Origin: Tubulanus polymorphus
Taxonomy: Eukaryota; Animalia; Nemertea
DNA length: 64,000 nt
Direction of reading: 5' to 3'
Assembly (NCBI RefSeq): GCF_964204645.1
Contig: NC_134035.1
Coordinates: 248,001-312,000 of the forward strand
Shown here: positions 4,601-35,593 of the stretch, piece after piece
Numbering within the stretch: the stretch's first letter is position 1
Layout of the letters: each line of letters starts with the position of its first letter
The notes under the pieces: model-generated
Databases searched by the model: none
Told to the model about the DNA's origin: nothing
The model's input: only the letters and a program-made list of their open reading frames with translations
Position numbers and translations under genes: made by a program

Positions 4601-7600
4601 TTAACAGGCCGGCTATTCACAAAGACAGACGCAAGTATCTACGGACGAGTATCAAAGAGTTAGCGTTACTATTCACTGATCAGCCAGGTTTACTCGGCCC
4701 AAAGGTACAGTTACTATATATGTTTATTACATTTTGATAAAAGTTGAATATTCCCTCCATTGAGTTTAGTATTAATGTGGTTATAATGAAAAAGAACAGA
4801 TTTTGGATTAATTTATTGGGGGTAGTGTACGTATATAGTTTTGAATGAACTGCTAGGTCTATTGTTTTCGCTGAATTTTGACCAGATTTCTTATGATTTG
4901 TTTTCAGGCACTTTATATATTCATGGCATTGTCAATGTGTAAAGACGAAATTGAATGGTTGCTCAGACATTACGGAAATCCACCCCCTAAAAAACTAAAC
5001 TTGAGAGTGTCGGCTGAAGATTTTGTCGATCGTCAACTTCCTGAAATGCTGTTTCATATGGAAGAATTAAGAGGTAGGTTTACACAGATTGATGACGTAC
5101 CAAAGGGTTTGGTTCCGCGATATCCTGCATACTGTGTTTGCTTGGAGGATATCCTGCAGGATTTGGTTTCAGGATATCTCCACATGTTGTAGTTTCAGGA
5201 TATCCTGCTGCAGAGTGTAGGGTTCCCAGACTGCAAATTGTTCTTTGCTACATCATTGATATGTAATCAGCATTTAGTATTTTCTAATGTCTGTGATACT
5301 TTGCTCATTCTCTAGCGCTAGTGAAGAAATACAACCAGGTTATACAGAGATATTACATTCAAATGATGGCTGGTTATGACGCGCCGGCGTTAAATGAAAT
5401 CATACAAGTACGTCATGTTACGTTATTGGAATTTATCAATTATTAACGAAATTCTCGAATGTTATTTCATAGTGTTTTGGTATTTTCAGTCGTTGTCTGC
5501 CTGTCCAGAGGATGAATCAATGATTCTGTCTTCATTTTGTAATATAATGCAGTCACTGTCAGTGAAACAAGGTAATCACTTTCTCTCTCACTTCATAAAA
5601 TGAATTTCTATTTCATTTCACTCCGCTCAACTCAGATGTTTTGACTTGAGAGTGATATCTGAGTTGGACGGTACAGTAGACTCCGCTCAAGTCAGATGTT
5701 TTGACTTGAGAGTGATATCTGAGTTGGATGATACAGTAGACTCCGCTCAAGTCAGATGTTTTGACTTGAGAGTGATATCTGAGTTGGATGGTACAGTAGA
5801 CTCCGCTCAAGTCAGATGTTTTGACTTGAGAGTGATATCTGAGTTGGATGATACAGTAGACTCCGCTCAAGTCAGATCTTTTGACTTGAGAGTGATATCT
5901 GAGTTGGACGGTACAGTAGACTCCGCTCAAGTCAGATGTTTTGACTTGAGAGTGATATCTGAGTTGGATGATACAGTAGACTCCGCTCAAGTCAGATGTT
6001 TTGACTTGAGAGTGATATCTGAGTTGGACGGTACAGTAGACTCCGCTCAAGTCAGATGTTTTGACTTGAGAGTGATATCTGAGTTGGATGATACAGTAGA
6101 CTCCGCTCAAGTCAGATGTTTTGACTTGAGAGTGATATCTGAGTTGGATGATACAGTAGACTCCGCTCAAGTCAGATGTTTTGACTTGAGAGTGATATCT
6201 GAGTTGGATGATACAGTAGACTCCGCTCAAGTCAGATCTTTTGACTTGAGAGTGATATCTGAGTTGGATGATACAGTAGACTCCGCTCAAGTCAGATCTT
6301 TTGACTTGAGAGTGATATCTGAGTTGGATGATACAGTAGACTCCGCTCAAGTCGGATGTTTTGACTTGAGAGTGATATCTGTGTTGGATGATACAGTAGA
6401 CTCTGCTCAAGTCCAATCTATTGACTTGAGAGTGATATCTGAGTTGGATGGTACAGTAGACTCCGCTCAAGTCAGATCTTTTGACTGGAGAGTGATATCT
6501 GAGTTGGATGGTACAGTAGACTCTGCTCAAGTCCAATCTATTGACTTGAGAGTGATATCTGAGTTGGATGGTACAGTAGACTCCGCTCAAGTCCAATCTA
6601 TTGACTTGAGATTGATATCTGTAGTGGATGGTTCATACTATCATAAAAATATTTCTACAAATATCTGACAGACTACTAAATGTATGTTGATTGGATCTGG
6701 CTTGAGGATAGTCTACTGTTTTACTATCAATATCTTTCTAAACTGCCTCAGATTTTACATGATGTTTTTGTGTATTGTCGTTTCAGTTGAGATGAATGAG
6801 TTGTTTGATTTTCGCGGGATCCGTCTGGATTGGTTCCGACTGCAGGCGTATACCAGCGTTAGTAAAGCTGCGTTCAGTTTGTGCGATTATCGTAATCTCG
6901 CCGTTCACATGAATATGGTTTCATTTCACACTAAAATGGTCGACAGTCTCGATGAAATGTTGCTGGAAACATCAGATCTATCGATTTATTGGTAAGATTT
7001 CAGTAGATTGAGCTCCTCCTCACAGGTATCAGCCTGTCTAGTCCGAGCTCCTCCTCACTGGTATCAGCCTGTCTAGTCCGAGCTCCTCCTCACTGGTATC
7101 AGCCTGTCTAGTCCGAGCTCCTCCTCACTGGTATCAGCCTGTCTAGTCCGAGCTCTTCCTCACTGGTATCAGCCTGTCTAGTCCGAGCTCCTCCTCACAG
7201 GTATCAGCCTGTCTAGTCCGAGCTCCTCCTCACTGGTATCAGCCTGTCTAGTCCGAGCTCCTCCTCACTGGTATCAGCCTGTCTAGTCCGAGCTCCTCCT
7301 CACTGGTATCAGCCTGTCTAGTCCGAGCTCCTCCTCACTGGTATCAGCCTGTCTAGTCCGAGCTCCTCCTCACAGGTATCAGCCTGTCTAGTCCGAGCTC
7401 CTCCTCACAGGTATCAGCTGTCTACCGGTATCTTTCTTTCACATACTGGCTTCTCGTTAATCTAGGGTTCATGGTTTAAATCCTGATGGGGGCAGATTTT
7501 CTCACTTATCTCTGGTCTGTCTCCCTTTCAATGAAAGAAAGAAAAAAGCTTCAATAAATCCTTGAATGGCACTCGGCGGGGGTGGGAAGAAACCTCAAAC

Positions 7601-22206: not shown

Positions 22207-22780
22207 GGATCCCGCATCACCTCAACCCCTAACCGGCTACTGTGGACACACTTCTCTCTAGGATTATCTCAAACTCTAACCTGCTTGGGATGCCGCAATG
22301 TAGACCAATGTGATACACTTCTCTAGGATTTATATCTGAACCCCTAACGGCTGCTGGGGCACTAGTGTAAACCGATGTGACACACTTCCCTAGGATTTAT
22401 ATCTCAACCCCTAACGGCTGCTGGGGCACCAGTGTAAACCGATGTGACACACTTCCCTAGGATTTATATCTCAACCCCTAACGGCTGCTGGGGCACCAGT
22501 GTAAACCGATGTGACACACTTCCCTAGGATTTATATCTCAACCCCTAACGGCTGCTGGGGCACCAGTGTAAACCGATGTGACACACTTCCCTAGGATTTA
22601 TATCTCAACCCCTAACGGCTGCTGGGGTACCAGTGTAAACCGATGTGACACACTTCCCTAGGATTTATATCTCAACCCCTAACGGCTGCTGGGGCACCAG
22701 TGTAAACCGATGTGACACACTTCTCTCTAGGATTTATATCTCAACCCCTAACGGCTGCTGGGGTACCAGTGTAAACCGAT
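22207..22780. repeat. 67-bp minisatellite, ~7 good plus 2 degenerate copies, each containing a 3' splice-site-like motif
   Basis: Unit GATTTATATCTCAACCCCTAACGGCTGCTGGGGCACCAGTGTAAACCGATGTGACACACTTCCCTAG, starting at 22327, 22394, 22461, 22528, 22595, 22662 and 22731. Confidence 0.92.
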
Positions 22781-22797
22781 GCACCAGTAAAAATGCA

Positions 22798-25700
22798 ATG
22801 TTGCTTTATCAACATGTAGACGCATCTGATACTGAGCAACAAACCGTGCAGTTTGTCGCTCAGAAAGGTATGAATTTTATCTCAGTTCATCAGATTTTGA
22901 GTTTACCAGTTTAGATGCATCTGGAGTGGATATCACGGATGGATGGAGTGTCATCGATCCCGGGTTCATTGGCTCAAATCCTAACAGGTCCGGGCCCGAG
23001 TCGCTGAAAAGTTGGTTAGAGTTAATCAGTGGATAGTTGACATAGTGACGATTACAACTTCACTGTTACGACGGTATTTATCCGTTGGTTTTCTTTAACT
23101 GACATTTTGACCACCACCGGGCCTCTGACGACGCCGTCAACAAACAGCAGCCGTCACGGTTACTGTTATTACAACATCAAACAATTCACCGAATTCTAAA
23201 CATCAAACACACAAAAAACAAGACACGTTTTTATCGTTTGAAGTTTGTTTTTTACGAGGAAGAAAATTTTATGAAGAATTTGACCTCGTGAAATTTTTGA
23301 AATGAAGTGAAACTGCAGACATCGTCGATCTGGTTTAACCTACTGATTCATAGATATTGTAGTCTGCTATTAGAGAGGTTGTCCGCTATTAGAGAGGTCG
23401 TCCGCTATTAGAGAGGTTGTCCGCTATTAGAGAGGTCGTCCGCTATTAGAGAGGTCGTCCGCTATTAGAGAGGTTGTCCGCTATTAGAGAGGTTGTCCGC
23501 TATTAGAGAGGTTGTCCGCTATTAGAGAGGTTGTCCGCTATTAGAGAGGTCGTCCGCTATTAGAGAGGTCGTCCGCTATTAGAGAGGTCGCTTCTGTTGT
23601 TGATATCGACAGATGGACAGATGGAGAGCAGCTTCTCGCGATAATATCATCATTCGAGGAGTCGATGACTCAAACGACTCAACGACTGACGACTCAAAAT
23701 GACTCCGTCTCTCCGAGTAATTGTTGTTTATACGGATTATGATCCCGACGTTTTGATATTTATCAATAATCTGATAATATCCGTCAAAATCTCATCTCAT
23801 CTCGCTCAGTTTCTCGCTGATGATAGGTTGTGTATAAAGATTCGAGAATTGTTGTTGTCGTTGGAGACAATACCTGGCCATGTGTTGCTAGCCTACGGCA
23901 GTCGTCGTGACGATGATTCTATTGTTGGTTGTAAATCGGTTGTTTTACGCAGTTTTGAGTGGGCTGACTGATGAAACCGGTGCACGCGCTGTTCGAATAA
24001 ACTAATGAACCATGAGTGTAAAAAATGGCTCGAAAATTATCTTTGAAATCGTTTGTCCGGAAAGCGTTGTAATATTACAGTCCTGTATCATCCAGAAACC
24101 CGAGGGGCTCTAATACTAAACTTACGCATTTGCGTCTAGAAGATTCTTCAGTAAATTCTTATAGATTTGTGTATGATTCTCTGATTACAGCTCACCTCGA
24201 GGTCCCGTTACATCCAAAACCTCCTGCACCCTATTCTTCAATAACTACAATAGATAGTTTTCTACTCATTTCAGGTGCTGGCCAACAACTTGATGCAATG
24301 TTGGACCTTCCATATTTGATGCACTTTTTGCACATTCATCGGCCAAAGTTCAAGTTTATCAAGTTGACGATAAGGGTAAGTTTATACAGAGAAACTAGAC
24401 AGATAGAGTAGAGAGAGGAGAGAGAGGTGTTTATCAGTTTGTGACCCACACATCACACACTCATCAGCTGTTAGTACTGATCATATAGAAAAAAACAACT
24501 CTAGAAAACTGTAGTTTATCATTTACCAATGAGAGGTGTCTGACTGTATACAGCGAGAGGCCTCTGTGGGCAGCTGAACCGATGATCACTAACCGTGTAG
24601 AATAGATTGGATTAGCACCTGTAAAACTGGTTATTGTTGATTCATCGATGGATTATTGAGAGAGATTGAGATTCGATCAGAATCTGGATACATATCCATC
24701 GACTATTAGACTATATCAGTGTATCTCTGGATGAATCGGTTAGTGTTGTTAGGATTCATGGATTATTCACTATGAGCATCTTAATCAGCAGCAGTAGCAG
24801 CAGCAGCAGCAGCCGCAGTGTGTAAACTAGAGTTTTCTCTGCCATTATTCTGTGAGTTAGAGTAACTGTGTAAAAGTTTTACAACTCCAGATGTTACTTG
24901 CACTCACCTTATGAGAGATATAAAAATTCTATCTTTGATTTCTCATATTCTGGGGTCAGTTGCTGCTCAATGCCGTAGTAAATACTCTACAGGACTATAG
25001 ATTTAGAACATTGAAAATGAATCTCGCAACTGCGGTACCGGGCCCTGGGCCCAGTTTCACAAAATAGTTTAACTCTAATTTTTGGTGTAATTGCCATTGG
25101 TTACGTCATGTTTTCAATGAGGACAACAATTCAAACTTAACCGTTTTAGGCTTAAACTTTTTCGTGAAACTGGGCCCTGGTATTAGTCTGGCTGTTAAGT
25201 CTTTTGAGCAACTAACCCAGGCCCCAGTTCCATAGTTCTGGGTTGAGTTAAGATAGGTTTGTTGTTTAACCGATGTACTGATGAACTGAGTCCAGTAGAA
25301 CTAACGCAGACTGCTGCTCCATTCTCATAGTACACTAACAGGATGTATCACTCGGTTTATAGGTCGCAGTTTTATAACATTGAAACTTTTCTGGAAAAAA
25401 ATCAAAGAACTATTCTGAAACCACTTGAACATTCGTTAAAAACTCTAGGTCTGGTTCATCGTGTCAGACTCTTAGATAGATAAGACTAAACCGAGCTTAT
25501 TTTCATCCAGTTGTACAGATAAGATGAAACCGGACCCAGTAGAGTTGGCTATTTACACATGTCATTGGTTTCTTTGTAGAAATATGAGTCAGTTTGATGG
25601 ATTTGAAATATATCCGTAAAATTGACTCACAGCAGCGTGGTGCTGTCGCTGTCTGATTGACCTACTCACTGAATACAGGGACAGCGTGGTGCTGTCGCTG

Positions 25701-28700
25701 TCTGATTGACCTACTCACTGAATACAGGGACAGCGTGGTGCTGTCGCTGTCTGATTGACCAACTCACTGAATACAGGGACAGCGTGGTGCTGTCGCTGTC
25801 TGATTGATCAACTCACTGAATACAGGGACAGCGTGGTGCTGTCGCTGTCTGATTGACCAACTCACTGAATACAGGGACAGCGTGGTGCTGTCGCTGTCTG
25901 ATTGATCAACTCACTGAATACAGGGACAGCGTGGTGCTGTCGCTGTCTGATTGACCAACTCATTGAATACAGGGACAGCGTGGTGCTGTCGCTGTCTGAT
26001 TGACCAACTCACTGAATACAGGGACAGCGTGGTGCTGTCGCTGTCTGATTGACCAACTCACTGAAAACTAGCCTTTTTAATTCTTCTTTTCTTTTGTCTT
26101 GTTATTTTTATAGGAACTTGAACAGTGTATTCGTGATAAAGACAGTTTAGTGACACCAGATATTTGCGCACGTATTTTACGTTATGTAATTCCCGATTCC
26201 AATATTCAGTAAGTAACAACCTCGAGTTCTCAGTAACAGTCTAAGAGTTCCTCGGAGGATCGCACCAGTTCTCATATCTATTTGACTTGGTTTGAGAGGT
26301 CATCGGGTGACCTCGTTAAGTCAGTTTTGCCTGATAGATGTTTTTAAACTTTAAATTAAAGGACCAGAATGAACTAGCTCAGTTGAATTAAAACATTGAT
26401 TTTTAATCCATTTTACATCGATACAGCGTAAAATGGATTAATAATCAGTCCTTTCTGGTTCGTAAAAGACATCAGGTATATACAACTACTGGAACTGACT
26501 GAGCTGGGTTACACGATGTTATCTGAAGCTTAGTTGAAATAGACATAAATGAATCTGTTGTAATCTGTGTATTAGATAAAATATAACAGTAATTCAATTA
26601 ATAGTATTATATATTCGAATGTAATACCGAACTGATTCAATATGAATTTCAATTTTTCCAGACATTAATTATATCTCTGAGTATCAGATCTTCGGTGTCA
26701 TTATTTATTCAACTGTTAATATAAACTGAATTAGTTCCGTATTCGCTGAGCAATTACAGCTGTATACAGAGGTCCGTCCGTAGAAATCTCATCAAAGATA
26801 ATCATTTCATATTTTGTTGTTGTTGCAGAATAACGAATTTCGAGTCGCATCTGACAAAGTTATTGAGCGAGAAACGTAAAGATTTGAATCCCCTAGCAAC
26901 GAAATCTTTTATTGAACTAACTGCTGAAGAGAAGGTGAGGTTGCTAATGGTTATGATACCCGCGGGATCCATCCCGGGGCTCTTTAACTAGTCCTATCAG
27001 ATCCCGGGGCTCTTTAACTAGTCCTATCGGAGCCCGGGGCTCTTTAACTAGTCCTATCGGAGCCCGCGGGTTCTTTAACTAGTCCTATCGGATCCCGGGG
27101 CTCTTTAACTAGTCCTATCAGATCCCGGGGCTCTTTAACTAGTCCTATCAGATCCCGGGGCTCTTTAACTAGTCCTATCGGAGCCCGGGGCTCTTTAACT
27201 AGTCCTATCGGAGCCCGCGGGTTCTTTAACTAGCCCTATCGGATCCCGGGCCTCTTTAACTAGTCCTATCGGATCCCGGGCCTCTTTAACTAGTCCTATC
27301 GGATCCCGGGCCTCTTTAACTAGTCCTATCGGATCCCGGGCCTCTTTAACTAGTCCTATCGGATCCCGGGCCTCTTTAACTAGTCCTGGGTCCCGCGGGT
27401 TCTTCCCTGATGATATTGTTCAATGTGAGCTGAGAGACACTGTCAACAGCCTCTTCCTACACTGTCAACAGCCTCTTCAACTGTGATTTAACTCCAGTGT
27501 ATTGTGTAGAGATACACCTGTGCCTAGTTCCACAATGAGATACTGGCACTGCTACTGTGGCAAGTGAGGATTCCAGTTTGTGATTAGTAAATCAATGTTC
27601 AGTGAAATCTATACCATACACTGAGTGTGAAAGTCAATCTTATATCTATTCGATGATTTGTTTGATAATATTTCGGATTCAGCAGCCTAAAAATCAAGTT
27701 CAAATTTCATCGAAAATTAACTAATTTTCATTACATTAATGCAGTGAATGATTGCGCCATCTGGTGAGTGCCGTTACCCGACTGGACGGAGGCGGCATTT
27801 GTCTGGATGAAGTTTATATGTTAGTTTGTGTTTTATTATAGGTTGATATATTGAAATGGTTAATAGAGTATACTTACGATGAGAAAGATGAAGATTTGGT
27901 TGATTCCGTTAATGACACGTGTCCCGCCACTGATGACATGGTTTGTATATACAAAATCCCCTCTCAAAAAACTTCTCCATTCCGCTAGATACCACTGATT
28001 TCGGACACATACTTAAAAGCCTATGATGAAAGGCGAGGATGGAGTCTCGATGATCTGATATTATTCATGCTGTGTATTTATATTTTTCAGCGAGCGATCA
28101 ATGCCGGACAGGACGCTGCAGGAAATACTTACTGGTATTTTGATGGTAAGAGTTACTGTGAATTTGTGCAAATCGACTGGAAATTTTCCATTTCTTCACA
28201 AGCTTGAACTAATGCAGGCCATGGAACTGGAAATGTACAAACACGGGGCTGAGGCGAAGGGTCGAGATAGTACCCAATTCTCCATATGCATATAATGTTT
28301 GTGAACATTGGATGGAGATGATTGAAAAATGCCACATTCATCACTATAAACTGGTTGTCTAGATATAAATTCTGACTGCAACAAATCCTTGGTTTGATCA
28401 CCATTAACAAACACTCGCATGTCTATATTATAAAATAATATAGAACTCCAAAATTGTCAGAATTGTTTCCCTTCCTTCAGCTAATATTTGATTCGACGTT
28501 TTGGTTATATCCTAAAAGTCATCATCATCATAAATACTTTTTACCCATCATCCAGCAGATTGGAGGGATATTATCGTCACCTTCGTCCATCCGGGCGAGC
28601 GGGCGGGCGGGCGGGCCAGTGGTAGGACGTCTAAGAGAATACTGCTCCTATCAAACAGTATTGTATCCATATCTAGTTTTACATCGAGCCTTGGTTTAGT

Positions 28701-31700
28701 AAATCTGGTTCGAGTACTCAGTAATGTAGGGATATTTTATCTTGCACAGATTTGAGATTATACAAAGAGATCGCCAGTAAGAAACTGATCACTCGTAAGG
28801 AATGGGAATGTTGTTGCGTAACGTTGAAAGATTGGATCGATTTGTTGGGTAAATATCGCGCGGTGACGAACGCCCAGGAACGAGAACTATTCGAATTCTT
28901 AAACAACGAAATTTTCCCCATCATTCAAGTGCAATTGCAGGTAAGTTCAGTATCGGGCTGAGCAGAGTTTAGATTAAAAAATCAACTCCTGAATTGAAGT
29001 GATGAATAAGTTTAATAAAACTCGTGAATCCGTTTAGGAGGAAATCAAAGCTGCCAACTGTTCCTGATTCCTGAAGTCTTACTGTTGATTACTGATTAAT
29101 TTGAACAGAAATATGAAAGATGTTACTGAGGGTCTTAGTGTTGATTACTGATTAATTTGAACAGAAATATGAAAGATGTTACTGAGGGTCTTAGTGTTGA
29201 TTACTGATTAATGTGAACATTTTCTTTCTTTTTTCAATGAAATGTAAGTGAAAAAATTCAATTAGTTACTAACGTTGGCAGCCCTGGTTTATCCTTTTTT
29301 GAAACAGGACCCTGAGTTTTAGAGGTTAACCCTTCTCTGGATCTGGTGTTTCTCAACTTGCAATTATTTTCTATTTTACAGAAAATCGAGAAAGGTGAAT
29401 TTCTGTCACCTGTGAATCAGGATTTAGACAATGCTGTGATTTTACAAAAAGAACTCTCCGATTCAAACAATACCGGATTATCATTGTTATTATCGGATAA
29501 AGTTGCCACGACGACATCGACAACCGGAGCGACAGCGGGGAGTGATATGGTGCTGAAATCGGAACCGGGACTCGAGACAGTTAACGGTGGTTCAAAGGAG
29601 AATGATACAGGTGGCGCTAGTGGTATTCTGAATGACGAAATTGGTGCTAATATTATCAATATTAAACATGAAGGTAAAATGACTAAAACACTTTTTGTAG
29701 TTTTACATTTATAAGATATTTTGCAGTTTTGGGTTTGTAGGTTTCAGTGTGGGGTTTGTAGTGGGGAGAGGGAGACCAAGAGTGGGAGGAAAGTAAGGGA
29801 GAGACTGGCAGGGTACGGAGTGGAGTGGAAGGAAAAGGGATTTGTATCTAATAGTGATTATTTCTGGTTTTGTTTTTAAGGTGATATCAAACAAGAGATA
29901 AAGTCTGAGTTAGACGGTCAGCAGACGGATATGACTGGTTTTAATGGAACTATGAGCGGTGAGTTTTAGGAACTGATTTGTCTCCTCGTTGAGGAAATCA
30001 CAGTGGACCCTCCTTTATACAAAGGAACATCGTTGATACAGTGGAACCTCAATAATACAAACCTCGTGGGCATACGTGAAATTTTAATTTGTGTAACTTT
30101 TCAGGTGATAAAGATAAAACACATATAAGCGGACAGATAGGAATAGGGACGACCCCTAATCAACGTTGTTCTCAGCAGGCGGAGAATTCAAGCCATTTCA
30201 TGCAGCAGCACAGTCAGATATTCGTATTCTCGACTGCGTTAGCGAATAAAGCGGCTGATTCTATACTGAGACGTCAGTGTAAATCTCTCATACAATATCA
30301 CCTCGATCAACCGCAAACAAAGGCTTTCTTACAGGTAAATAAATATTGCCATTTCATCAATGTTTGAAATTTGTAAATATGGGCGTACTCTTTTATGACC
30401 TCCGAAGTCTCCATCCGAAATCTCCGGTTGGCTCCACACAAAATCCGAATCACACCACCTCAACAGAAAGGAGGTTTCGGAGACTCCACAATGCCACGTG
30501 ACCAATTAGAGAGTACGATTGGAGGCAGACGGATTCTCCAATCTGATAAAAGAGTTCGCCCTATGAATTTAATCACGCTCACTGTCATCGCCTAAGTTTG
30601 ACTCTTAAGTTACTTCATTTCAACGGATATTTACTGAGAAGTTGGCCTTGTGAAAACTTTAAACTTAAAAATTTTGTGTTTCAATGAATACATGATGCCA
30701 CAGCCACTCAGAGACTATTCCTGCAATATTTCACGCGATTGATGGCATTACAATGTTGTACAGAATACTGTACATTGGGTCTCAGCAGTGTTAGATGTGC
30801 TTCCTGTGAATGTGAACTCATTTCTAGAATTGTACCGAGGGCCGTAGAGGCTATAGCCAATCTCTTAGACTTTTCGACTGAAGTAACGTCTGTAGAACTG
30901 GATCCTGGTGCTTGTATTACCTGCCTAAATGTAGTACATTCTAATTACTCAAACTTTATACCAATTGTCACAAAGTGTGAACTATTTCTATCTTTCTCTC
31001 GAGATGACAGAAAAAATATTCATTTCATTACAGAAAAACCCGATGAATGTGAAAATGAACCAATTTAACCAACACCAACAGAGATCTCAGGGTTTCGCGA
31101 CGATGTACAGCGGTAACATGCAGAAACCAACCGGTCCTCCGGGTCAGGGACAATTTAGACCCAGTATGGATTCAAACAATACGGTCGCGCAGTGGGTCGA
31201 TCAACAAAACATGAACTTACAACAAGCGGGAATAAACCCGATGGGCGGAGGAGGTCCCGGACCTTATAACGGCCCGCCGACACAGCATAATCAAGGATTT
31301 CCGCAACAAAGTCCGAACGTTAATATGGGAACCTGGCAACAGCAACAGAACGCGATGATGCATCCGATGATGCAACACGGGAATCCCGGGTTTAATCCGA
31401 ATAACGCTTGCCTACCGATGGGTGTTAGTCCGCATAATCTATCTCATACTAAAGTTCCTAATGAGAATCTTACGCCGGAACAATTACAACGAAGAGAAGA
31501 ACACCTAGCGAGTCTACGCAAAATACAACAGATGTTGTTTCCCGAACAGGCCGGAGGTGACGGTCAGCCGATGAATGTACCGATGGGTAGCCCCGGAGGA
31601 GGTATGCCCGGTATGCCTCCCGGCGCTATGCAACACAATCCCAACATGCAGATGCACATGCTGCAGCATAAAATGATGGGTCAACGCGGTATGAGTCCGA

Positions 31701-34700
31701 ACTATATGGGCCCCGGTGGTCCGCAAGGTCCGCCTGGTCCGCGAATGATGGGTCCATCCCCTCACGGTATGATGTCCCCTCAGCCGATATCTCAAGCCGA
31801 TTTACAGAATATGACGCCGAATCAACGCGAGTGGTACCGGTTACAGTGCGAGTACTACGACGAAAAACGCCGTCAACAGCATCAACAAATGAACGCGATG
31901 CGCATGCAAGGACCGGGTCCGGGCCCGACGGGGCAGGGTCCGGGGCACGGCCCGCCGCCCTCGTACTCGTATTCGTTAGCCCAGAAACGTCACGTGATGC
32001 CCGGTCAGTTGCCATCGCCGACGTCACCGGGTTTTAACGGTCCGATTCCTTCTCCACATTTACAGCCATCACCGAATCCACCTGAACTGATGCAGCAGTA
32101 TCCCGCACCTCCAACATCTGGCGGCCAGAAACGACCTGCTGAGAACTATATCGGTCCTGGTGGTGGTCCGGGTGGTGGTGGTGCTAATGTAGGGGGCAAT
32201 GGTTACGATCCTATGATGAACCTTAACAATATGGGTCAATTTGGCAGCAATGATCCAAATTTAATGCAACAGCAGCAACGTGGTCAGCCTGGATTACAAG
32301 GGCCAGGAGGTCAGCCTGGATTACACGGTCCGAGTGGTCAACTAGGATTACATGGTCCAGGTGGTCAGCCAGGAATACACGGGCCAGGTGGTCAGCCGGG
32401 AATACACGGGCCAGGCGGTCAACCAGGAATACACGGGCCAGGCGGTCAGCAAGGACTTCATGGCCCAGGTGGTCAGTCTGGTTTACATGGTCCAGGTGGC
32501 CAGCCAGGATTGCCAGGCCCAGGTGGTCAGCCAGGATTACCGGGCCCAGGTGGTCAACCAGGATTACAGGGCCCAGGTGGTCAACCTGGTTTACATGGTC
32601 CAGGCGTCCAGCCAGGATTACCGGGCCCAGGTGGTCAGCCAGGATTACCGGGTCCAGGTGGTCAGCCAGGATTACCTGGCCCAGGCAGTCAGCCAGGGTT
32701 CCATGGCCCAGGTGGTCAGCCAGGGTTCCATGGCCCAGATGGTCAGCCAGGATTACACGGCCCAGGTGGACAACCAGGATTACATGGCCCAGGTGGACAA
32801 CCAGGATTACAAGGCCCAGGTGGACAACCAGGATTACACGGCCCAGGTGGTCAGCCAGGATTACACGGCTCAGGTGGTCAGCCAGGATTACACGGCCCAG
32901 GGGGTGATGTTTTTATTCAGAAAGCGCAAAGTCCAGAACAATTTCTCGATTCGTCGTCAGGTGGGGCCGCTAAACCTCCGCCTAGTTACGGGCAGGCGAC
33001 AAAACGACGAAAAGTGGATAACGGACAAATGGACGATATTTATAAACAATTACAACCGACACCTTCCCCTCAACAGATAAACTATTTAACTCAGTTCGAG
33101 GGCCAGGAATTAACGATTACTAAACAAGCAAATTTAGCATATCATGACAACCAGGGGGCGCTGGGGGCGGCTAATGATTCGAGTCTTCCATCACAGAAAA
33201 CTACATCGTCGCAACCGGGCACCCCGGCAACGCCTCAACAACACAACAATAACAACAACAATACCGTTACCACGCCGACTTCAACGATCAATCAGAGTCC
33301 GATAGGACAGCAATCGACCAATCAGATGCCGCCGAGTCCGTTCTCACCGGGTATCGTACAACAGAGAGGACTGTCAACCGTGGCAACCGGCGCTAACGCT
33401 TCGAATAATAGTAAAAACACGGGCGCAGCGAGACCGCAGCCGAGTCCGATGTCTCACAGCGGCCAGATGGCGTCACCTCACACGCCGAACCCGGTACCTT
33501 CTCGTACTACGCAGCAACCCGGTACTCCGCTTACAACAATACCCGTTAAATCACCGTTATCGACTCATAGTCAAAAATCAATATCGAGTCCGTTACCGAT
33601 CAGTCAGAAACGACTGAGTACCGACTCTAACGCGACTACGACGAGTCAATCAAATCAGATCATCGTTAATTCTCCTTCCGTCGGCGCCACTCAACGATTA
33701 ACTCACTTCGATCCGCCGTCGTTAACAACGACGACCAGTTCGACTAACGCGTGTGTGTCCAACAGTAAACCGGCTACTCCGACTACGGGCAAGAGCGCCA
33801 CCATGTCGAATATAACATCGGCGAGTCTCGCTAATCTCGCGAAGGGCGTCGAACATCTGTCGAATCAGATGCAACAGAACATGCTACAAGGCGGTCCGTT
33901 TCATAACATACAAATACAGAGTCAAGTGTCCGATTCTAAAAATAACGGTTCACCGCAAACATCGTCGCAACATAGCATCCATCAACAATCACCGCAAGCA
34001 GCGCCGACTAGTGTCGCTCCGCATAGTAATAATAGTAATAATTCGAATCAACCTCCGAGTGTTAATAATACGTTCGTTAACGCGACAATGTCGATTCAAC
34101 AACTCAACATTCAAAGTGTCAATAACCCGGCAATGGGCGGGGCTAATATGCAAATACAACAGGCGAGTATGGAACAACAACAACAACAGCAACAACAGAC
34201 AGGTGGCGCTGTGAATATACCGGGTGGTATGTCCGGACAGATGATGAATCAGTCCATGAGCGGACAGACGATGCAACAGCACAGTCTGCAGAACTGTAAT
34301 ATACCACCACCAGGTGGCGCTCCTCGGATACATAATCAATCGCATCCTAACATGCCTCCCGGTATGCAAAATATGAATATACCTCCGGGAATGCACAGCC
34401 AACCGGGCATGGGTCCCGGTGGTGCGGGAATCAGTCCCGCCATGTCGATGAATCAACCCGGAATGAACCATTCGATGTCGATGTCCCAGAGTCAAACAAT
34501 GGGTAATAATTCGGCTGCAATGTTTCAAAATCAACAGCAGCAACAGCAAGCAGCTGCAGCTGCGCAGTTTCAGCACCAGCAACAACAACAGCAACACGGA
34601 CCGCTTCCATCGATGGCGTCAATGGCTTCGAGTATGCAGCAGCAGCAGCAGCAGCAGCAGACGACAGTATCGAGTTCTAGTTCTAATTCAGCCGCTGCAT

Positions 34701-35593
34701 CAACCTCTCGTACGTCTGGTAGTGTTAAACCTATCACTAACGCTAACGTTCAAATACAAGCTAAAGCACCGAATACGATACAATATTTACCGGCGAATCC
34801 ACCAGTTTCACAACCAACGCGATTCCCGCCTAAATTACCCGATTTCGCCGACATCAATCGATATCCGGCTCCGTTAGAAGGTAAAATGGCCGCTGCGCGC
34901 ATGCAGTACTTCCCGCCGAATAACGACATGCCCCAAGGCCCCGGTCCAGGTATGGGTAATATGGGCCCGCACATGTCCATGTCTTCGCCCGATCAAGTGA
35001 TGAGTCCTCAACAGCAGATGATGATGAGTCAAGGACACCAGCCTCGTTCTCAAATGTATCCCGGTAACATGCAGCCGGGGATTCCCCCGCACGGGATGTA
35101 CGACAACATGCATAATATGCCGACGCAACATTACGGTAACCATGGTAATGCGGGAATGATGCCGCAAGGTCCGTGCGGACATCCTCACGGGCAACATATG
35201 ATGGGCGGCCCGGGGGATTACCCCCCGCACGGTGGACAAATGGACGCTTTAATGAATTCTCAATCGCCGACCATGATGGGTGGGCCGGGACACGGGCCTC
35301 CTATGGGGCACAGTCAAAATCCTCATGGGCACATGATGCACGGACAGCATATGCAGCAGATGCAGGCCCAACAGATGTCGATGCAGGGCCCGGGTATGGG
35401 TATGCACCACGGTCACGGCGGTATGGGCGCACCGGTTGACGGTCAGGGCTATCTACGACCACCGCCTCAGCAGAATTACAGCATGCAGTATCAACAGTTT
35501 CAACAACAGCTTTACTCGCAGGGCCGACCGAGACATCCGGGTATGGGTAACATGGGCATGAATCAGAATCCTCAATTCCCGGGTATGATGTAG
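22798..35593 (+). CDS. BCL9: BCL9/Legless homologue with an N-terminal DDT-WHIM (CECR2/RSF1-like) module, 11 coding exons, ~1958 aa
   Basis: Exons 22798-22867, 24275-24375, 26114-26208, 26829-26934, 27842-27940, 28091-28145, 28750-28940, 29382-29673, 29881-29958, 30105-30334 and 31034-35593 splice in frame (5877 nt). HD1 IFVFSTALANKAADSIL...LIQYH, HD2 NENLTPEQLQRREEHLASLRKIQQMLF, HD3 QREWYRLQCEYYDEKRR. The BCL9 identity of 30105-35593 is very secure. The start codon and the link to the DDT exons are inferred. Confidence 0.8.
23362..23590. repeat. 19-bp minisatellite, ~12 copies
   Basis: Unit CCGCTATTAGAGAGGTYGT. Confidence 0.95.
24275..28940 (+). CDS. DDT + WHIM1 + WHIM2/3 (WSD) module exons, CECR2/RSF1-like ISWI-binding region
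   Basis: Spliced translation: LDAMLDLPYLMHFLHIHRPKFKFIKLTIRELEQCIRDKDSLVTPDICARILRYVIPDSNIQITNFESHLTKLLSEKRKDLNPLATKSFIELTAEEKVDILKWLIEYTYD...MRAINAGQDAAGNTYWYFDDLRLYKEIA...EWECCCVTLKDWIDLLGKYRAVTNAQERELFEFLNNEIFPII. It contains NPL-x4-F-x2-L-x4-K-V-x-IL-x2-L (WHIM1), G-x-D-x2-G-x2-YWYF-x3-RLYKE (WHIM2) and W-x-x-C-x-x-T-L-x-DW (WHIM3), in the CECR2 order. Confidence 0.82.
25048..25176. mobile_element. MITE with GGCCCAGTTTCAC TIRs and CTG target duplication
   Basis: CTG|GGCCCAGTTTCAC...GTGAAACTGGGCC|CTG. Confidence 0.75.
25633..26065. repeat. 49-bp minisatellite, ~9 copies
   Basis: Unit CAGCGTGGTGCTGTCGCTGTCTGATTGACCAACTCACTGAATACAGGGA. Confidence 0.95.
26971..27388. repeat. 30-bp minisatellite, ~14 copies
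   Basis: Unit ATCCCGGGGCTCTTTAACTAGTCCTATCGG. Confidence 0.95.
30218..30306 (+). other. BCL9 homology domain 1 (Pygopus PHD-binding)
   Basis: IFVFSTALANKAADSILRRQCKSLIQYHL resembles vertebrate VYVFSTEMANKAAEAVLKGQVETIVSFH. Confidence 0.9.
31451..31546 (+). other. BCL9 homology domain 2 (beta-catenin-binding helix)
   Basis: KVPNENLTPEQLQRREEHLASLRKIQQMLFPE resembles vertebrate NPDGLSQEQLEHRERSLQTLRDIQRMLF. Confidence 0.92.
32282..32902 (+). repeat. Coding 27-bp tandem repeat, 23 copies, consensus GQPGLHGPG
   Basis: Lies in the long BCL9 exon, in frame, with many synonymous differences between copies. Confidence 0.92.

What the first reader, a model, noticed from the sequence alone, without database searches (positions are those of the whole stretch)
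22798..35593. BCL9/Legless fused to a DDT-WHIM ISWI-binding module: a possible hard-wired Wnt to chromatin-remodeller adaptor
Seen in sequence: six small exons (24275-28940), mostly invisible in the ORF track, splice with canonical GT-AG sites and matching phases into a CECR2/RSF1-like DDT-WHIM1-WHIM2/3 region. The reading frame continues through a linker (29382-29958) into BCL9 HD1, HD2 and HD3, giving ~1958 aa with no stop. Established: DDT-WHIM modules in CECR2, RSF1, BAZ/ACF1 and BPTF/NURF301 bind ISWI ATPases; BCL9 HD1 binds Pygopus and HD2 binds beta-catenin; ISWI complexes regulate Wingless targets in Drosophila. Vertebrate BCL9/BCL9L and fly Legless have no DDT domain. Inference: one polypeptide could recruit an ISWI remodeller directly to TCF/beta-catenin enhancers, with the Pygo PHD replacing the bromodomain/PHD reader that is absent here. 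I do not recall this architecture being described.
Basis: partly seen in the sequence, partly recalled or inferred. Interest (0 to 1): 0.92.

Follow-up and report, generated by a model that had tools for sequence, protein, structure and literature searches.

The report
BCL9 gene with ancestral DDT-WHIM domain
The ribbon worm's BCL9/Legless gene (a Wnt/beta-catenin co-activator) really does begin with a folded DDT-WHIM domain of the kind that docks ISWI chromatin remodellers, and this is an old architecture shared by many invertebrates and amphioxus, which the known vertebrate and fly proteins are not reported to have.

Summary
The window is from Tubulanus polymorphus (Nemertea). Ten exons (24275-35593, + strand) encode one protein. 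It has an N-terminal CECR2-type DDT-WHIM module (about 212 aa), a linker, and BCL9 HD1, HD2 and HD3.

- **Gene model:** RefSeq already holds this model (LOC141912499, 1927 aa, "uncharacterized").
- **RNA:** One spliced transcript contig joins exons 4 to 10 through GT..AG joints, including the critical 28940->29382 junction.
- **Domain identity:** The module aligns to CECR2 N-termini by profile-profile comparison (99.9%, E 1e-35). It folds at pLDDT 93.5, and its best solved match is Ioc3 of yeast ISW1a (Z 11.3, 210 of 215 residues).
- **Separate CECR2:** A distinct CECR2 gene with a bromodomain lies 3.2 Mb away.

The interpretation needs correcting. This is not a local fusion. The same architecture occurs in annelid, chiton, bryozoan, tapeworm, horseshoe crab, scorpion, sea spider and amphioxus BCL9 models. 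These modules form one clade (98/95) apart from CECR2. Two ichthyosporeans carry DDT-WHIM plus an HD1-like motif.

ISWI binding is inferred and was not shown. No paper in the searched library links BCL9 with DDT or WHIM. The scan's notes hold no earlier report of this on other DNA.

The parts
22798..22867 (+). It is unverified and is not in the RefSeq CDS.
   Evidence: The frame is open with a GT donor. It lies directly after a 67-bp x 7 tandem repeat at 22299-22781. The transcript contig has about 185 further letters 5' of E1, but I could not read them.
24275..24375 (+). E1: start of the DDT helix bundle. The RefSeq start codon is at 24298.
   Evidence: alignment with orthologues.
26114..26208 (+). 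E2: second part of the DDT domain (ELEQCIRDKD...LRYV).
   Evidence: (own-genome profile hit at 26087-26212).
26829..26934 (+). E3: region leading into WHIM1.
   Evidence: The loose end of the X2 contig before 27840 reads the end of this exon. WHIM1 scores 17.8 bits on P0001 residues 78-101.
27842..27940 (+). E4: WHIM1 helix (VDILKWLIEY...).
   Evidence: joint 27940->28091 in RNA.
28091..28145 (+). E5: WSD/WHIM2 core with the GxD signature (G132-Q-D134) and YWYF.
   Evidence: Weak Pfam WSD hit. G132 is invariant and D134 is conserved in at least 90% of 44 homologues. Joint 28145->28750.
28750..28940 (+). E6: C-terminal strands and helices of the WHIM module. This is the last exon of the module.
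   Evidence: Best own-genome profile hit, 1.6e-26.
28941..29381 (+). Intron between the module and the linker. This is the critical junction. It holds a 56-bp tandem repeat that is high-copy in the reads.
   Evidence: Skipped with GT..AG in the X2 transcript contig.
29382..29673 (+). E7: low-complexity linker.
   Evidence: no Pfam hit.
29881..29958 (+). E8: linker. A 12-bp in-frame indel allele lies at 29895-29906.
   Evidence: the indel is seen in runs X1 and X2.
30105..30334 (+). E9: HD1, the Pygo-binding homology domain. The core QIFVFSTALANKAADSILRRQCKSLIQYH lies at about 30215-30301.
   Evidence: Local HD1 HMM, 5e-28; alignment; joints.
31034..35593 (+). E10: HD2 (about 31466-31573), HD3 (about 31808-31879), a GGQPGLHGP repeat (32280-32905), the C-terminal BCL9 homology blocks and the stop codon.
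   Evidence: Pfam BCL9 1.1e-12. BCL9 homologues at E 1e-68 to 1e-50. Alignment; tandem repeat.

Best explanation
This is a single gene, the Tubulanus polymorphus orthologue of BCL9/Legless. Its product keeps an N-terminal folded DDT-WHIM domain (residues 1 to about 212), paralogous to the N-terminus of CECR2. A disordered linker follows, then the short BCL9 docking elements: HD1 (Pygo PHD), HD2 (beta-catenin) and HD3 (ChiLS). The domain was inherited vertically with BCL9 since at least the bilaterian ancestor. The textbook 'all-disordered adaptor' picture drawn from vertebrates and flies would then be a derived state. Shown here: the gene structure, the spliced transcript, the domain's homology and fold, its distribution across phyla, and the separate CECR2 gene. 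Inferred (my odds about 0.5-0.6): like the DDT-WHIM modules of CECR2, ACF1, Ioc3 and plant DDT proteins, it docks an ISWI ATPase and possibly linker DNA. BCL9 would then couple the Wnt enhanceosome to nucleosome spacing or sliding.
For: - **Gene and transcript:** The exons match RefSeq P0001 exactly. One RNA contig splices E4 through E10 and continues into E3.
- **BCL9 identity:** Pfam BCL9 scores 48 bits. HD1, HD2 and HD3 align with named BCL9 proteins.
- **Module homology:** An exhaustive HMMER search gives 681 relatives, and most long hits are bromodomain proteins of the CECR2 type. hhalign against CECR2 N-termini gives 99.9%, E 1e-35, over 219 columns.
- **Pfam on orthologues:** DDT reaches 22.7 bits (cut-off 22) in P0127 and WHIM1 reaches 19.4 bits (cut-off 19.1) in the chiton. 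DDT is hit in 4 of 12 members, best E 8.6e-6.
- **Fold:** AF2 gives pLDDT 93.5 and pTM 0.80. The best solved fold is Ioc3 of ISW1a (2y9z_B), Z 11.3, 210 of 215 residues. ESM Atlas DDT/WHIM/WSD clusters match at TM 0.74-0.80 over the whole model.
- **Same architecture elsewhere:** Owenia, Liolophura, Bugula, Hymenolepis, Tachypleus/Limulus, Centruroides, Nymphon and three Branchiostoma species.
- **Tree:** These modules form one clade, 98/95, separate from CECR2.
- **Separate CECR2:** A distinct gene with DDT, WSD and bromodomain exons lies at C11:3.426-3.437 Mb.
- **Literature:** The CECR2 DDT domain is required for SMARCA1 binding (PMC7948406).
Against: - Pfam does not reach its own thresholds on the Tubulanus sequence itself (WHIM1 17.8 against 19.1; no DDT hit).
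- No experiment or prediction here shows ISWI binding. The complex job gave no answer.
- The GxD signature is conserved, but its role in ISWI binding is unproven (PMC11789628).
- The RNA evidence is an assembled contig from one study, with no raw reads, so the isoform proportions and the 5' end are unknown.
- Many bivalve and gastropod BCL9 models, and one scorpion isoform, lack the module. Module-less isoforms may therefore be common.
Confidence: 0.8

Rival explanations
1. The architecture is real, but the DDT-WHIM fold in BCL9 no longer binds ISWI, or never did. It would serve another role, such as linker-DNA contact, docking a different partner, or stabilising the enhanceosome.
For: The module forms its own clade, diverged from CECR2 at about 25-30% identity. 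It falls below Pfam thresholds in Tubulanus. No BCL9 interactome in the paper I read mentions ISWI (PMC5352222), but those baits (vertebrate BCL9/B9L, fly Legless) are not described there as having this module.
Against: Every DDT-WHIM protein I know to have been tested binds ISWI: CECR2 (PMC7948406), Ioc3 (2y9z), and ACF1, Itc1 and plant DDT proteins from established knowledge. The fold matches Ioc3 over its full length. GxD and the YWYF core are conserved.
Confidence: 0.35
2. The main BCL9 product lacks the module, through an internal promoter or alternative first exon. The DDT-WHIM isoform would be minor or stage-specific. A short stand-alone DDT-WHIM product by retention of intron 28941-29381 may also exist.
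For: Centruroides RefSeq isoform X1 (1606 aa) starts just after the module of X2 (1859 aa). Many mollusc models start in the linker. Reading into the intron at 28941 meets a stop after six codons.
Against: The only transcript contig seen carries the module spliced to the rest. No spliced or start-site evidence for other forms was obtained. X3 pieces that cross exon borders are unspliced and could be DNA or pre-mRNA.
Confidence: 0.25
3. These are two neighbouring genes, a short DDT-WHIM gene and BCL9, joined only by read-through or by mis-assembly of transcripts.
For: A contig can span two genes. B. lanceolatum, Lottia, Strigamia and Bugula annotations split the module from the rest.
Against: A canonical GT..AG splice joins E6 to E7 in frame. 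The same in-frame architecture is predicted independently in at least nine phyla or classes. The module tree follows the species tree. No stop or start signal is conserved between the module and HD1.
Confidence: 0.03

Closest known systems
BCL9 / BCL9L (vertebrates) and Legless (Drosophila)
   Same: It has HD1, HD2 (Pfam PF11502) and HD3 in the same order, long Pro/Gln/Met-rich disordered stretches, and conserved C-terminal blocks. By sequence it is orthologous to proteins named BCL9 in molluscs, chelicerates and amphioxus.
   Different: It carries a folded DDT-WHIM domain of about 212 residues in front of HD1. Vertebrate and fly proteins are described as more than 90% disordered with HD1 and HD2 as the N-terminal elements (PMC5352222). 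I did not scan them directly for a remnant.
CECR2 (CERF complex subunit; Drosophila dikar)
   Same: The N-terminal DDT-WHIM1-WSD module is homologous over its whole length (hhalign 99.9%). Like CECR2, it sits at the extreme N-terminus.
   Different: It has no bromodomain, and I saw no AT-hook in the Tubulanus protein (not systematically scanned). It forms a separate clade (98/95). The genome has its own CECR2 with a bromodomain at C11:3.43 Mb.
Ioc3 of yeast ISW1a (PDB 2y9z chain B)
   Same: It is the best structural match and the only one that covers the whole model (Z 11.3, rmsd 3.7, 210 residues). Ioc3 is the solved example of a DDT-WHIM protein bound to the ISWI HAND-SANT-SLIDE region.
   Different: Sequence identity is 13%. 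Ioc3 is larger, with inserts. No sequence-level match to any solved chain was found.
KIAA2026/BRD10 helical domain (PF23450) and fungal or plant DDT-WHIM-PHD proteins
   Same: There are sub-threshold Pfam hits in 7 of 12 BCL9-linked modules. Atlas TM is 0.64 to KIAA2026 and 0.74-0.80 to the plant, fungal and chordate DDT clusters. Fungal relatives are found by HMMER.
   Different: Those proteins pair the module with a chromatin reader (bromodomain or PHD) in the same chain. Here any reader would have to come in trans, for example the Pygo PHD through HD1 (inference).

Membership tests
BCL9/Legless | HD2 beta-catenin-binding helix (Pfam PF11502 above its gathering score) | tested here: met
   48 bits against a cut-off of 25, at residues 553-588 of P0001.
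BCL9/Legless | HD1 (Pygo PHD-binding motif) N-terminal to HD2 | tested here: met
   A local HMM built from BCL9 homologues gives 5e-28 at residues 362-419. The motif QIFVFSTALANKAAD aligns with named BCL9 proteins. Binding itself was not tested.
BCL9/Legless | HD3 helix (ChiLS ligand) after HD2 | tested here: met
   NMTPNQREWYRLQCEYYDEKRR aligns with HD3 of mollusc, annelid and chelicerate BCL9. Its function is taken from PMC5352222.
DDT-WHIM module (ISWI accessory subunits) | Pfam DDT (PF02791) at its gathering score | tested here: inconclusive
   There is no DDT hit on the Tubulanus module itself. Orthologous modules reach 22.7 bits (cut-off 22) in P0127. Four of 12 members hit, best E 8.6e-6.
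DDT-WHIM module (ISWI accessory subunits) | WHIM1 and WSD (WHIM2/3) motifs following DDT in order, with the GxD signature | tested here: inconclusive
   WHIM1 scores 17.8 bits in Tubulanus (cut-off 19.1) and 19.4 in the chiton orthologue. WSD is only weak (E 0.18 and 0.018). The order DDT-WHIM1-WSD is kept, and G132-Q-D134 is conserved.
DDT-WHIM module (ISWI accessory subunits) | Homology to an accepted member over the whole module | tested here: met
   hhalign against CECR2-type N-termini gives 99.9%, E 1e-35, over 219 columns. HMMER gives 6e-10 to a mayfly bromodomain protein.
DDT-WHIM module (ISWI accessory subunits) | Fold of the Ioc3 DDT-WHIM module | tested here: met
   The AF2 model has pLDDT 93.5. 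2y9z_B matches at Z 11.3 with 210 of 215 residues aligned and is the top of 48,161 chains. Atlas DDT/WHIM clusters match at TM 0.74-0.80.
DDT-WHIM module (ISWI accessory subunits) | Physical binding to an ISWI ATPase | not testable with these tools
   The ISWI HAND-SANT-SLIDE region is split over several exons. A complex job with three single-exon pieces gave 'no answer'.
CECR2 (CERF) | Bromodomain C-terminal to the DDT-WHIM module in the same protein | tested here: not met
   There is no bromodomain in P0001 or anywhere in the window. The bromodomain exon (1.9e-9) belongs to a different locus at C11:3.426 Mb.
CECR2 (CERF) | Orthology of the module with CECR2 modules | tested here: not met
   BCL9-linked modules form their own clade, 98/95, apart from the bromodomain-linked ones.

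The most novel reading that the evidence does not exclude
BCL9 did not begin as a disordered adaptor. It began as an ISWI-type remodeller subunit: a DDT-WHIM protein with an HD1 docking motif, already present in unicellular holozoans (Chromosphaera, Creolimax). It acquired the beta-catenin-binding HD2 in animals. Most bilaterian lineages still have this hard link between the Wnt enhanceosome and a nucleosome-spacing machine, while vertebrates and flies lost it. The model-organism view of BCL9 would then miss an ancestral function.
Probability: 0.35. Interest if true: 0.8.

Novelty: new variant of a known kind. Interest (0 to 1): 0.7.

Why it matters
BCL9/Legless is a core Wnt co-activator and a cancer drug target. 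It is thought of as an unstructured string of short docking motifs. A conserved, confidently folded DDT-WHIM domain at its N-terminus, found from amphioxus to nemerteans, chelicerates and flatworms, changes the ancestral picture of the protein.

It gives a concrete, testable route from beta-catenin/Pygo to ISWI-type nucleosome remodelling. It also gives a natural experiment: lineages with and without the domain. The ichthyosporean DDT-WHIM plus HD1 proteins would push part of the BCL9 architecture back before animals. The public annotations can also be corrected, since they currently read 'uncharacterized', 'CECR2' or 'SPRR3', or split the gene into two models.

Tried and rejected
- **Pfam on single exons** found only a weak WSD hit.
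- **Foldseek against PDB** found nothing. A profile against PDB sequences gave only chance beta-lactamase rows.
- **Word-limited region searches** were nearly blank. P0001:1-212 returned two proteins, and P0125:440-830 returned only amphioxus. Vertebrate, insect, echinoderm and cnidarian BCL9 proteins were therefore not scanned directly for the module.
- **The complex prediction** used the module with three single-exon pieces of the Tubulanus ISWI SANT/SLIDE region as separate chains. The result was 'no answer', score 0.06 against a mark of 0.34. It counts neither for nor against binding.
- **The protein atlas search on P0127** did not reveal its organism.
- **The nested-gene idea** (BCL9 inside an intron of CECR2) is rejected. 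No bromodomain exon lies in the window, and CECR2 lies elsewhere.
- **Joined exons:** one local script concatenated candidate exons only to compare them with P0001. It found nothing because of an off-by-one border.
- **MPRK start:** a search for a conserved 'MPRK' start upstream of E1 found none.
Full report
**What is in the window**

The window is from the nemertean Tubulanus polymorphus. The 4.6-kb exon has a 100% match to RefSeq protein LOC141912499 (P0001, 1927 aa, "uncharacterized protein").

Mapping P0001 onto the window exon by exon gives ten coding exons on the + strand:
- E1 24275-24375 (RefSeq ATG at 24298)
- E2 26114-26208
- E3 26829-26934
- E4 27842-27940
- E5 28091-28145
- E6 28750-28940
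- E7 29382-29673
- E8 29881-29958
- E9 30105-30334
- E10 31034-35593

All have AG/GT borders and consistent phases.

I sent no joined sequence of my own to any search tool. The full-length protein was used only as the database entry P0001. One local script concatenated candidate exons for a comparison with P0001 and returned nothing.

**RNA evidence**

Three runs of one study hold the stretch 27800-32200.

Run X1 is continuous through the introns and so behaves like DNA. Run X2 holds one contig of 7417 letters that lies on E4, E5, E6, E7, E8, E9 and E10. Its joints are 27940->28091, 28145->28750, 28940->29382, 29958->30105 and 30334->31034, all with GT..AG ends. The E7->E8 joint is blurred only by a 12-bp in-frame indel allele at 29895-29906, which the DNA-like run shares. 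The contig's loose end before 27840 reads the end of E3.

The junction that decides between one gene and two (28940->29382) is therefore seen spliced. Two limits apply. This is an assembled contig, not raw reads, from one study. It says nothing about isoform proportions or the 5' end.

The contig extends about 185 letters beyond E1, so an upstream exon exists. That exon begins right after a 67-bp tandem repeat, and RefSeq does not use it as coding. The residues just upstream of RefSeq's Met ('QQLDAM') align with conserved residues of the orthologues. The true start is therefore probably upstream of 24298.

**The BCL9 part**

Pfam BCL9 (HD2) scores 48 bits against a cut-off of 25. HD1 (QIFVFSTALANKAADSILRRQCKSLIQYH, in E9) and HD3 (NMTPNQREWYRLQCEYYDEKRR) align with proteins named BCL9 in oysters, scallops, snails, horseshoe crabs and amphioxus. 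According to PMC5352222, HD1 binds Pygo, HD2 binds Armadillo/beta-catenin and HD3 binds ChiLS. That paper also describes BCL9/B9L as more than 90% disordered.

**The N-terminal module**

Single exons are too short for Pfam. On P0001:1-215, Pfam gives only sub-threshold WHIM1 (17.8 bits against 19.1) and KIAA2026_hel. The orthologues do better:
- DDT reaches 22.7 bits (cut-off 22) in P0127.
- WHIM1 reaches 19.4 bits (cut-off 19.1) in the chiton.
- In the chiton orthologue the hits fall in the order DDT, WHIM1, WSD.
- DDT is hit in 4 of 12 modules, best E 8.6e-6.

An exhaustive HMMER search with three BCL9-linked modules finds 681 proteins at E <= 0.001. The long ones below the top group are mostly bromodomain proteins of the CECR2 type. 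Profile against profile, the BCL9-linked modules align to CECR2-type N-termini with probability 99.9%, E 1e-35, over 219 columns.

AlphaFold2 with a 44-row alignment gives pLDDT 93.5 and pTM 0.80. Foldseek against PDB finds nothing. The Foldseek-independent search ranks Ioc3 of yeast ISW1a (2y9z_B) first, at Z 11.3, rmsd 3.7 and 210 of 215 residues. It is the only row that spans the whole model; the following rows match only a CH-like bundle in residues 1-114. In the ESM Atlas the model matches DDT/WHIM1/WSD clusters of plants, fungi and chordates at TM 0.74-0.80 over residues 1-215.

I conclude that this is a genuine DDT-WHIM module. It is divergent enough to escape Pfam thresholds in this species.

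**It is not CECR2 itself**

The window has no bromodomain exon. The same chromosome carries, 3.2 Mb away (C11:3,425,889-3,436,642, minus strand), a second set of module exons followed by bromodomain exons. There, DDT scores 21.9 bits, WSD has E 4e-4 and Bromodomain has E 1.9e-9. The genome therefore keeps a separate CECR2.

**It is not a local fusion**

The same module stands in front of BCL9 HD1/HD2 in gene models from many taxa:
- Owenia fusiformis (annelid) and Liolophura sinensis (chiton)
- Bugula neritina (bryozoan; the protein is named 'CECR2' but has HD2)
- Hymenolepis diminuta (tapeworm)
- Tachypleus and Limulus ('protein BCL9 homolog')
- Centruroides scorpions and Nymphon (sea spider)
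- Branchiostoma belcheri and B. floridae. In B. lanceolatum the gene is split into two models.
- Fragments in Lottia and Strigamia

In a careful ML tree of 49 modules, the 11 bilaterian BCL9-linked ones form one clade (UFBoot 98, SH-aLRT 95). Its internal order is close to the species tree, with amphioxus set against protostomes and the chelicerates grouped together. The clade is separate from the CECR2/bromodomain clade and from the fungal DDT-WHIM-PHD clade. The domain has therefore travelled with BCL9 since at least the bilaterian ancestor.

Two ichthyosporeans, Chromosphaera perkinsii (P0138) and Creolimax fragrantissima (P0256), have a DDT-WHIM module, a charged coiled region and an HD1-like motif. 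An unnamed ENA sequence (P0156) has a partial module with the same arrangement. For Chromosphaera the motif is KYVFSTQLANAAAAAVYNGHSKSLVQFF, with BLASTP 8e-9 to Tubulanus HD1 and 2e-9 to amphioxus.

Many bivalve and gastropod models lack the module, and Centruroides has RefSeq isoforms with and without it. Module-less isoforms or incomplete models are therefore common. I could not scan vertebrate, insect, echinoderm or cnidarian BCL9 directly because the word-based searches were exhausted. Their lack of the domain rests on the literature and on their absence among the top 150 HMMER hits.

**Mechanism**

Shown: one polypeptide carries a folded DDT-WHIM domain together with the Pygo-, beta-catenin- and ChiLS-docking elements.

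Inferred: the domain binds an ISWI ATPase. The grounds are as follows:
- CECR2's DDT domain is required for SMARCA1 binding (PMC7948406).
- Ioc3 is solved in complex with the Isw1 HAND-SANT-SLIDE region.
- DDT-WHIM proteins in fungi, plants and animals are ISWI partners (established knowledge).
- The GxD signature and the YWYF core are conserved here.

Against over-reading: the role of GxD is unproven (PMC11789628). My complex job used single-exon ISWI pieces and gave no answer. I put ISWI binding at roughly 0.5-0.6. The idea that the Pygo PHD substitutes for the missing reader domain is plausible but untested.

**Novelty**

Full-text searches for BCL9 with 'DDT domain', 'WHIM' or CECR2 gave nothing relevant. 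Reviews and the enhanceosome paper describe BCL9 as disordered. The gene models are public, but the domain is unannotated and, as far as this library shows, undescribed.

I rate it a new variant of a known kind. The models exist, but the recognition of the domain does not.

Noticed in passing
window 32280-32905: A 27-bp unit repeated about 23 times inside the BCL9 coding exon. It encodes a collagen-like GGQPGLHGP nonapeptide array between HD3 and the C-terminal blocks. Pfam Collagen is only weak (E 0.004). The repeat drew many collagen false hits in the homology search.
   Followed up: partly
window 29895-29906: A 12-bp in-frame indel allele (loss of EIKS in the linker exon E8), present in both the DNA-like run X1 and the transcript contig of X2, together with several SNPs.
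   Followed up: partly
P0138 (Chromosphaera perkinsii), P0256 (Creolimax fragrantissima), P0156 (ENA): Unicellular holozoan proteins (and one unnamed ENA sequence with a partial module) that combine a DDT-WHIM module with an HD1-like motif but have no recognisable HD2. They may be pre-animal precursors of BCL9.
   Followed up: partly
G000:C11:3425889-3436642 (-), loci L010-L012: The genuine CECR2 orthologue (DDT, WSD and bromodomain exons) lies on the same chromosome, 3.2 Mb from the BCL9 gene. A weaker third module-like hit lies at C9:13892575-13892835.
   Followed up: partly
P0283 (Bugula), P0124+P0287 (Branchiostoma lanceolatum), P0140 (Lottia), P0129 (Strigamia): Public annotations are probably wrong or fragmented. 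A bryozoan BCL9 is named 'CECR2'. The amphioxus gene is split into a 479-aa module protein and a 1618-aa 'SPRR3'. Lottia and Strigamia list module fragments as separate small proteins.
   Followed up: no
window 22299-22781, 23362-23588, 25633-26065, 26971-27387, 29076-29219; also 28976-29269 and 30299-30592: The introns and the upstream region are full of tandem repeats (units of 67, 19, 49, 30 and 56 bp). Two intronic stretches have read depths in the thousands, so they are high-copy interspersed repeats.
   Followed up: no
window 5613-6668: Long ORFs on both strands over the same stretch (327 and 340 aa) are products of a tandem repeat and not genes.
   Followed up: no
P0125 (Branchiostoma belcheri): In this model an HD3-like element (residues 649-677) precedes HD2 (779-807), the reverse of the usual order. 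I did not examine whether this is real or a model error.
   Followed up: no
P0127 (Logan contig of SRR15101703, L009): A 988-aa protein of unknown organism with a DDT-WHIM module above the Pfam DDT cut-off, an AT-hook-like RGRP motif, an HD1 very like the vertebrate one and an HD2-like stretch. It falls outside the bilaterian BCL9 clade in the tree.
   Followed up: partly
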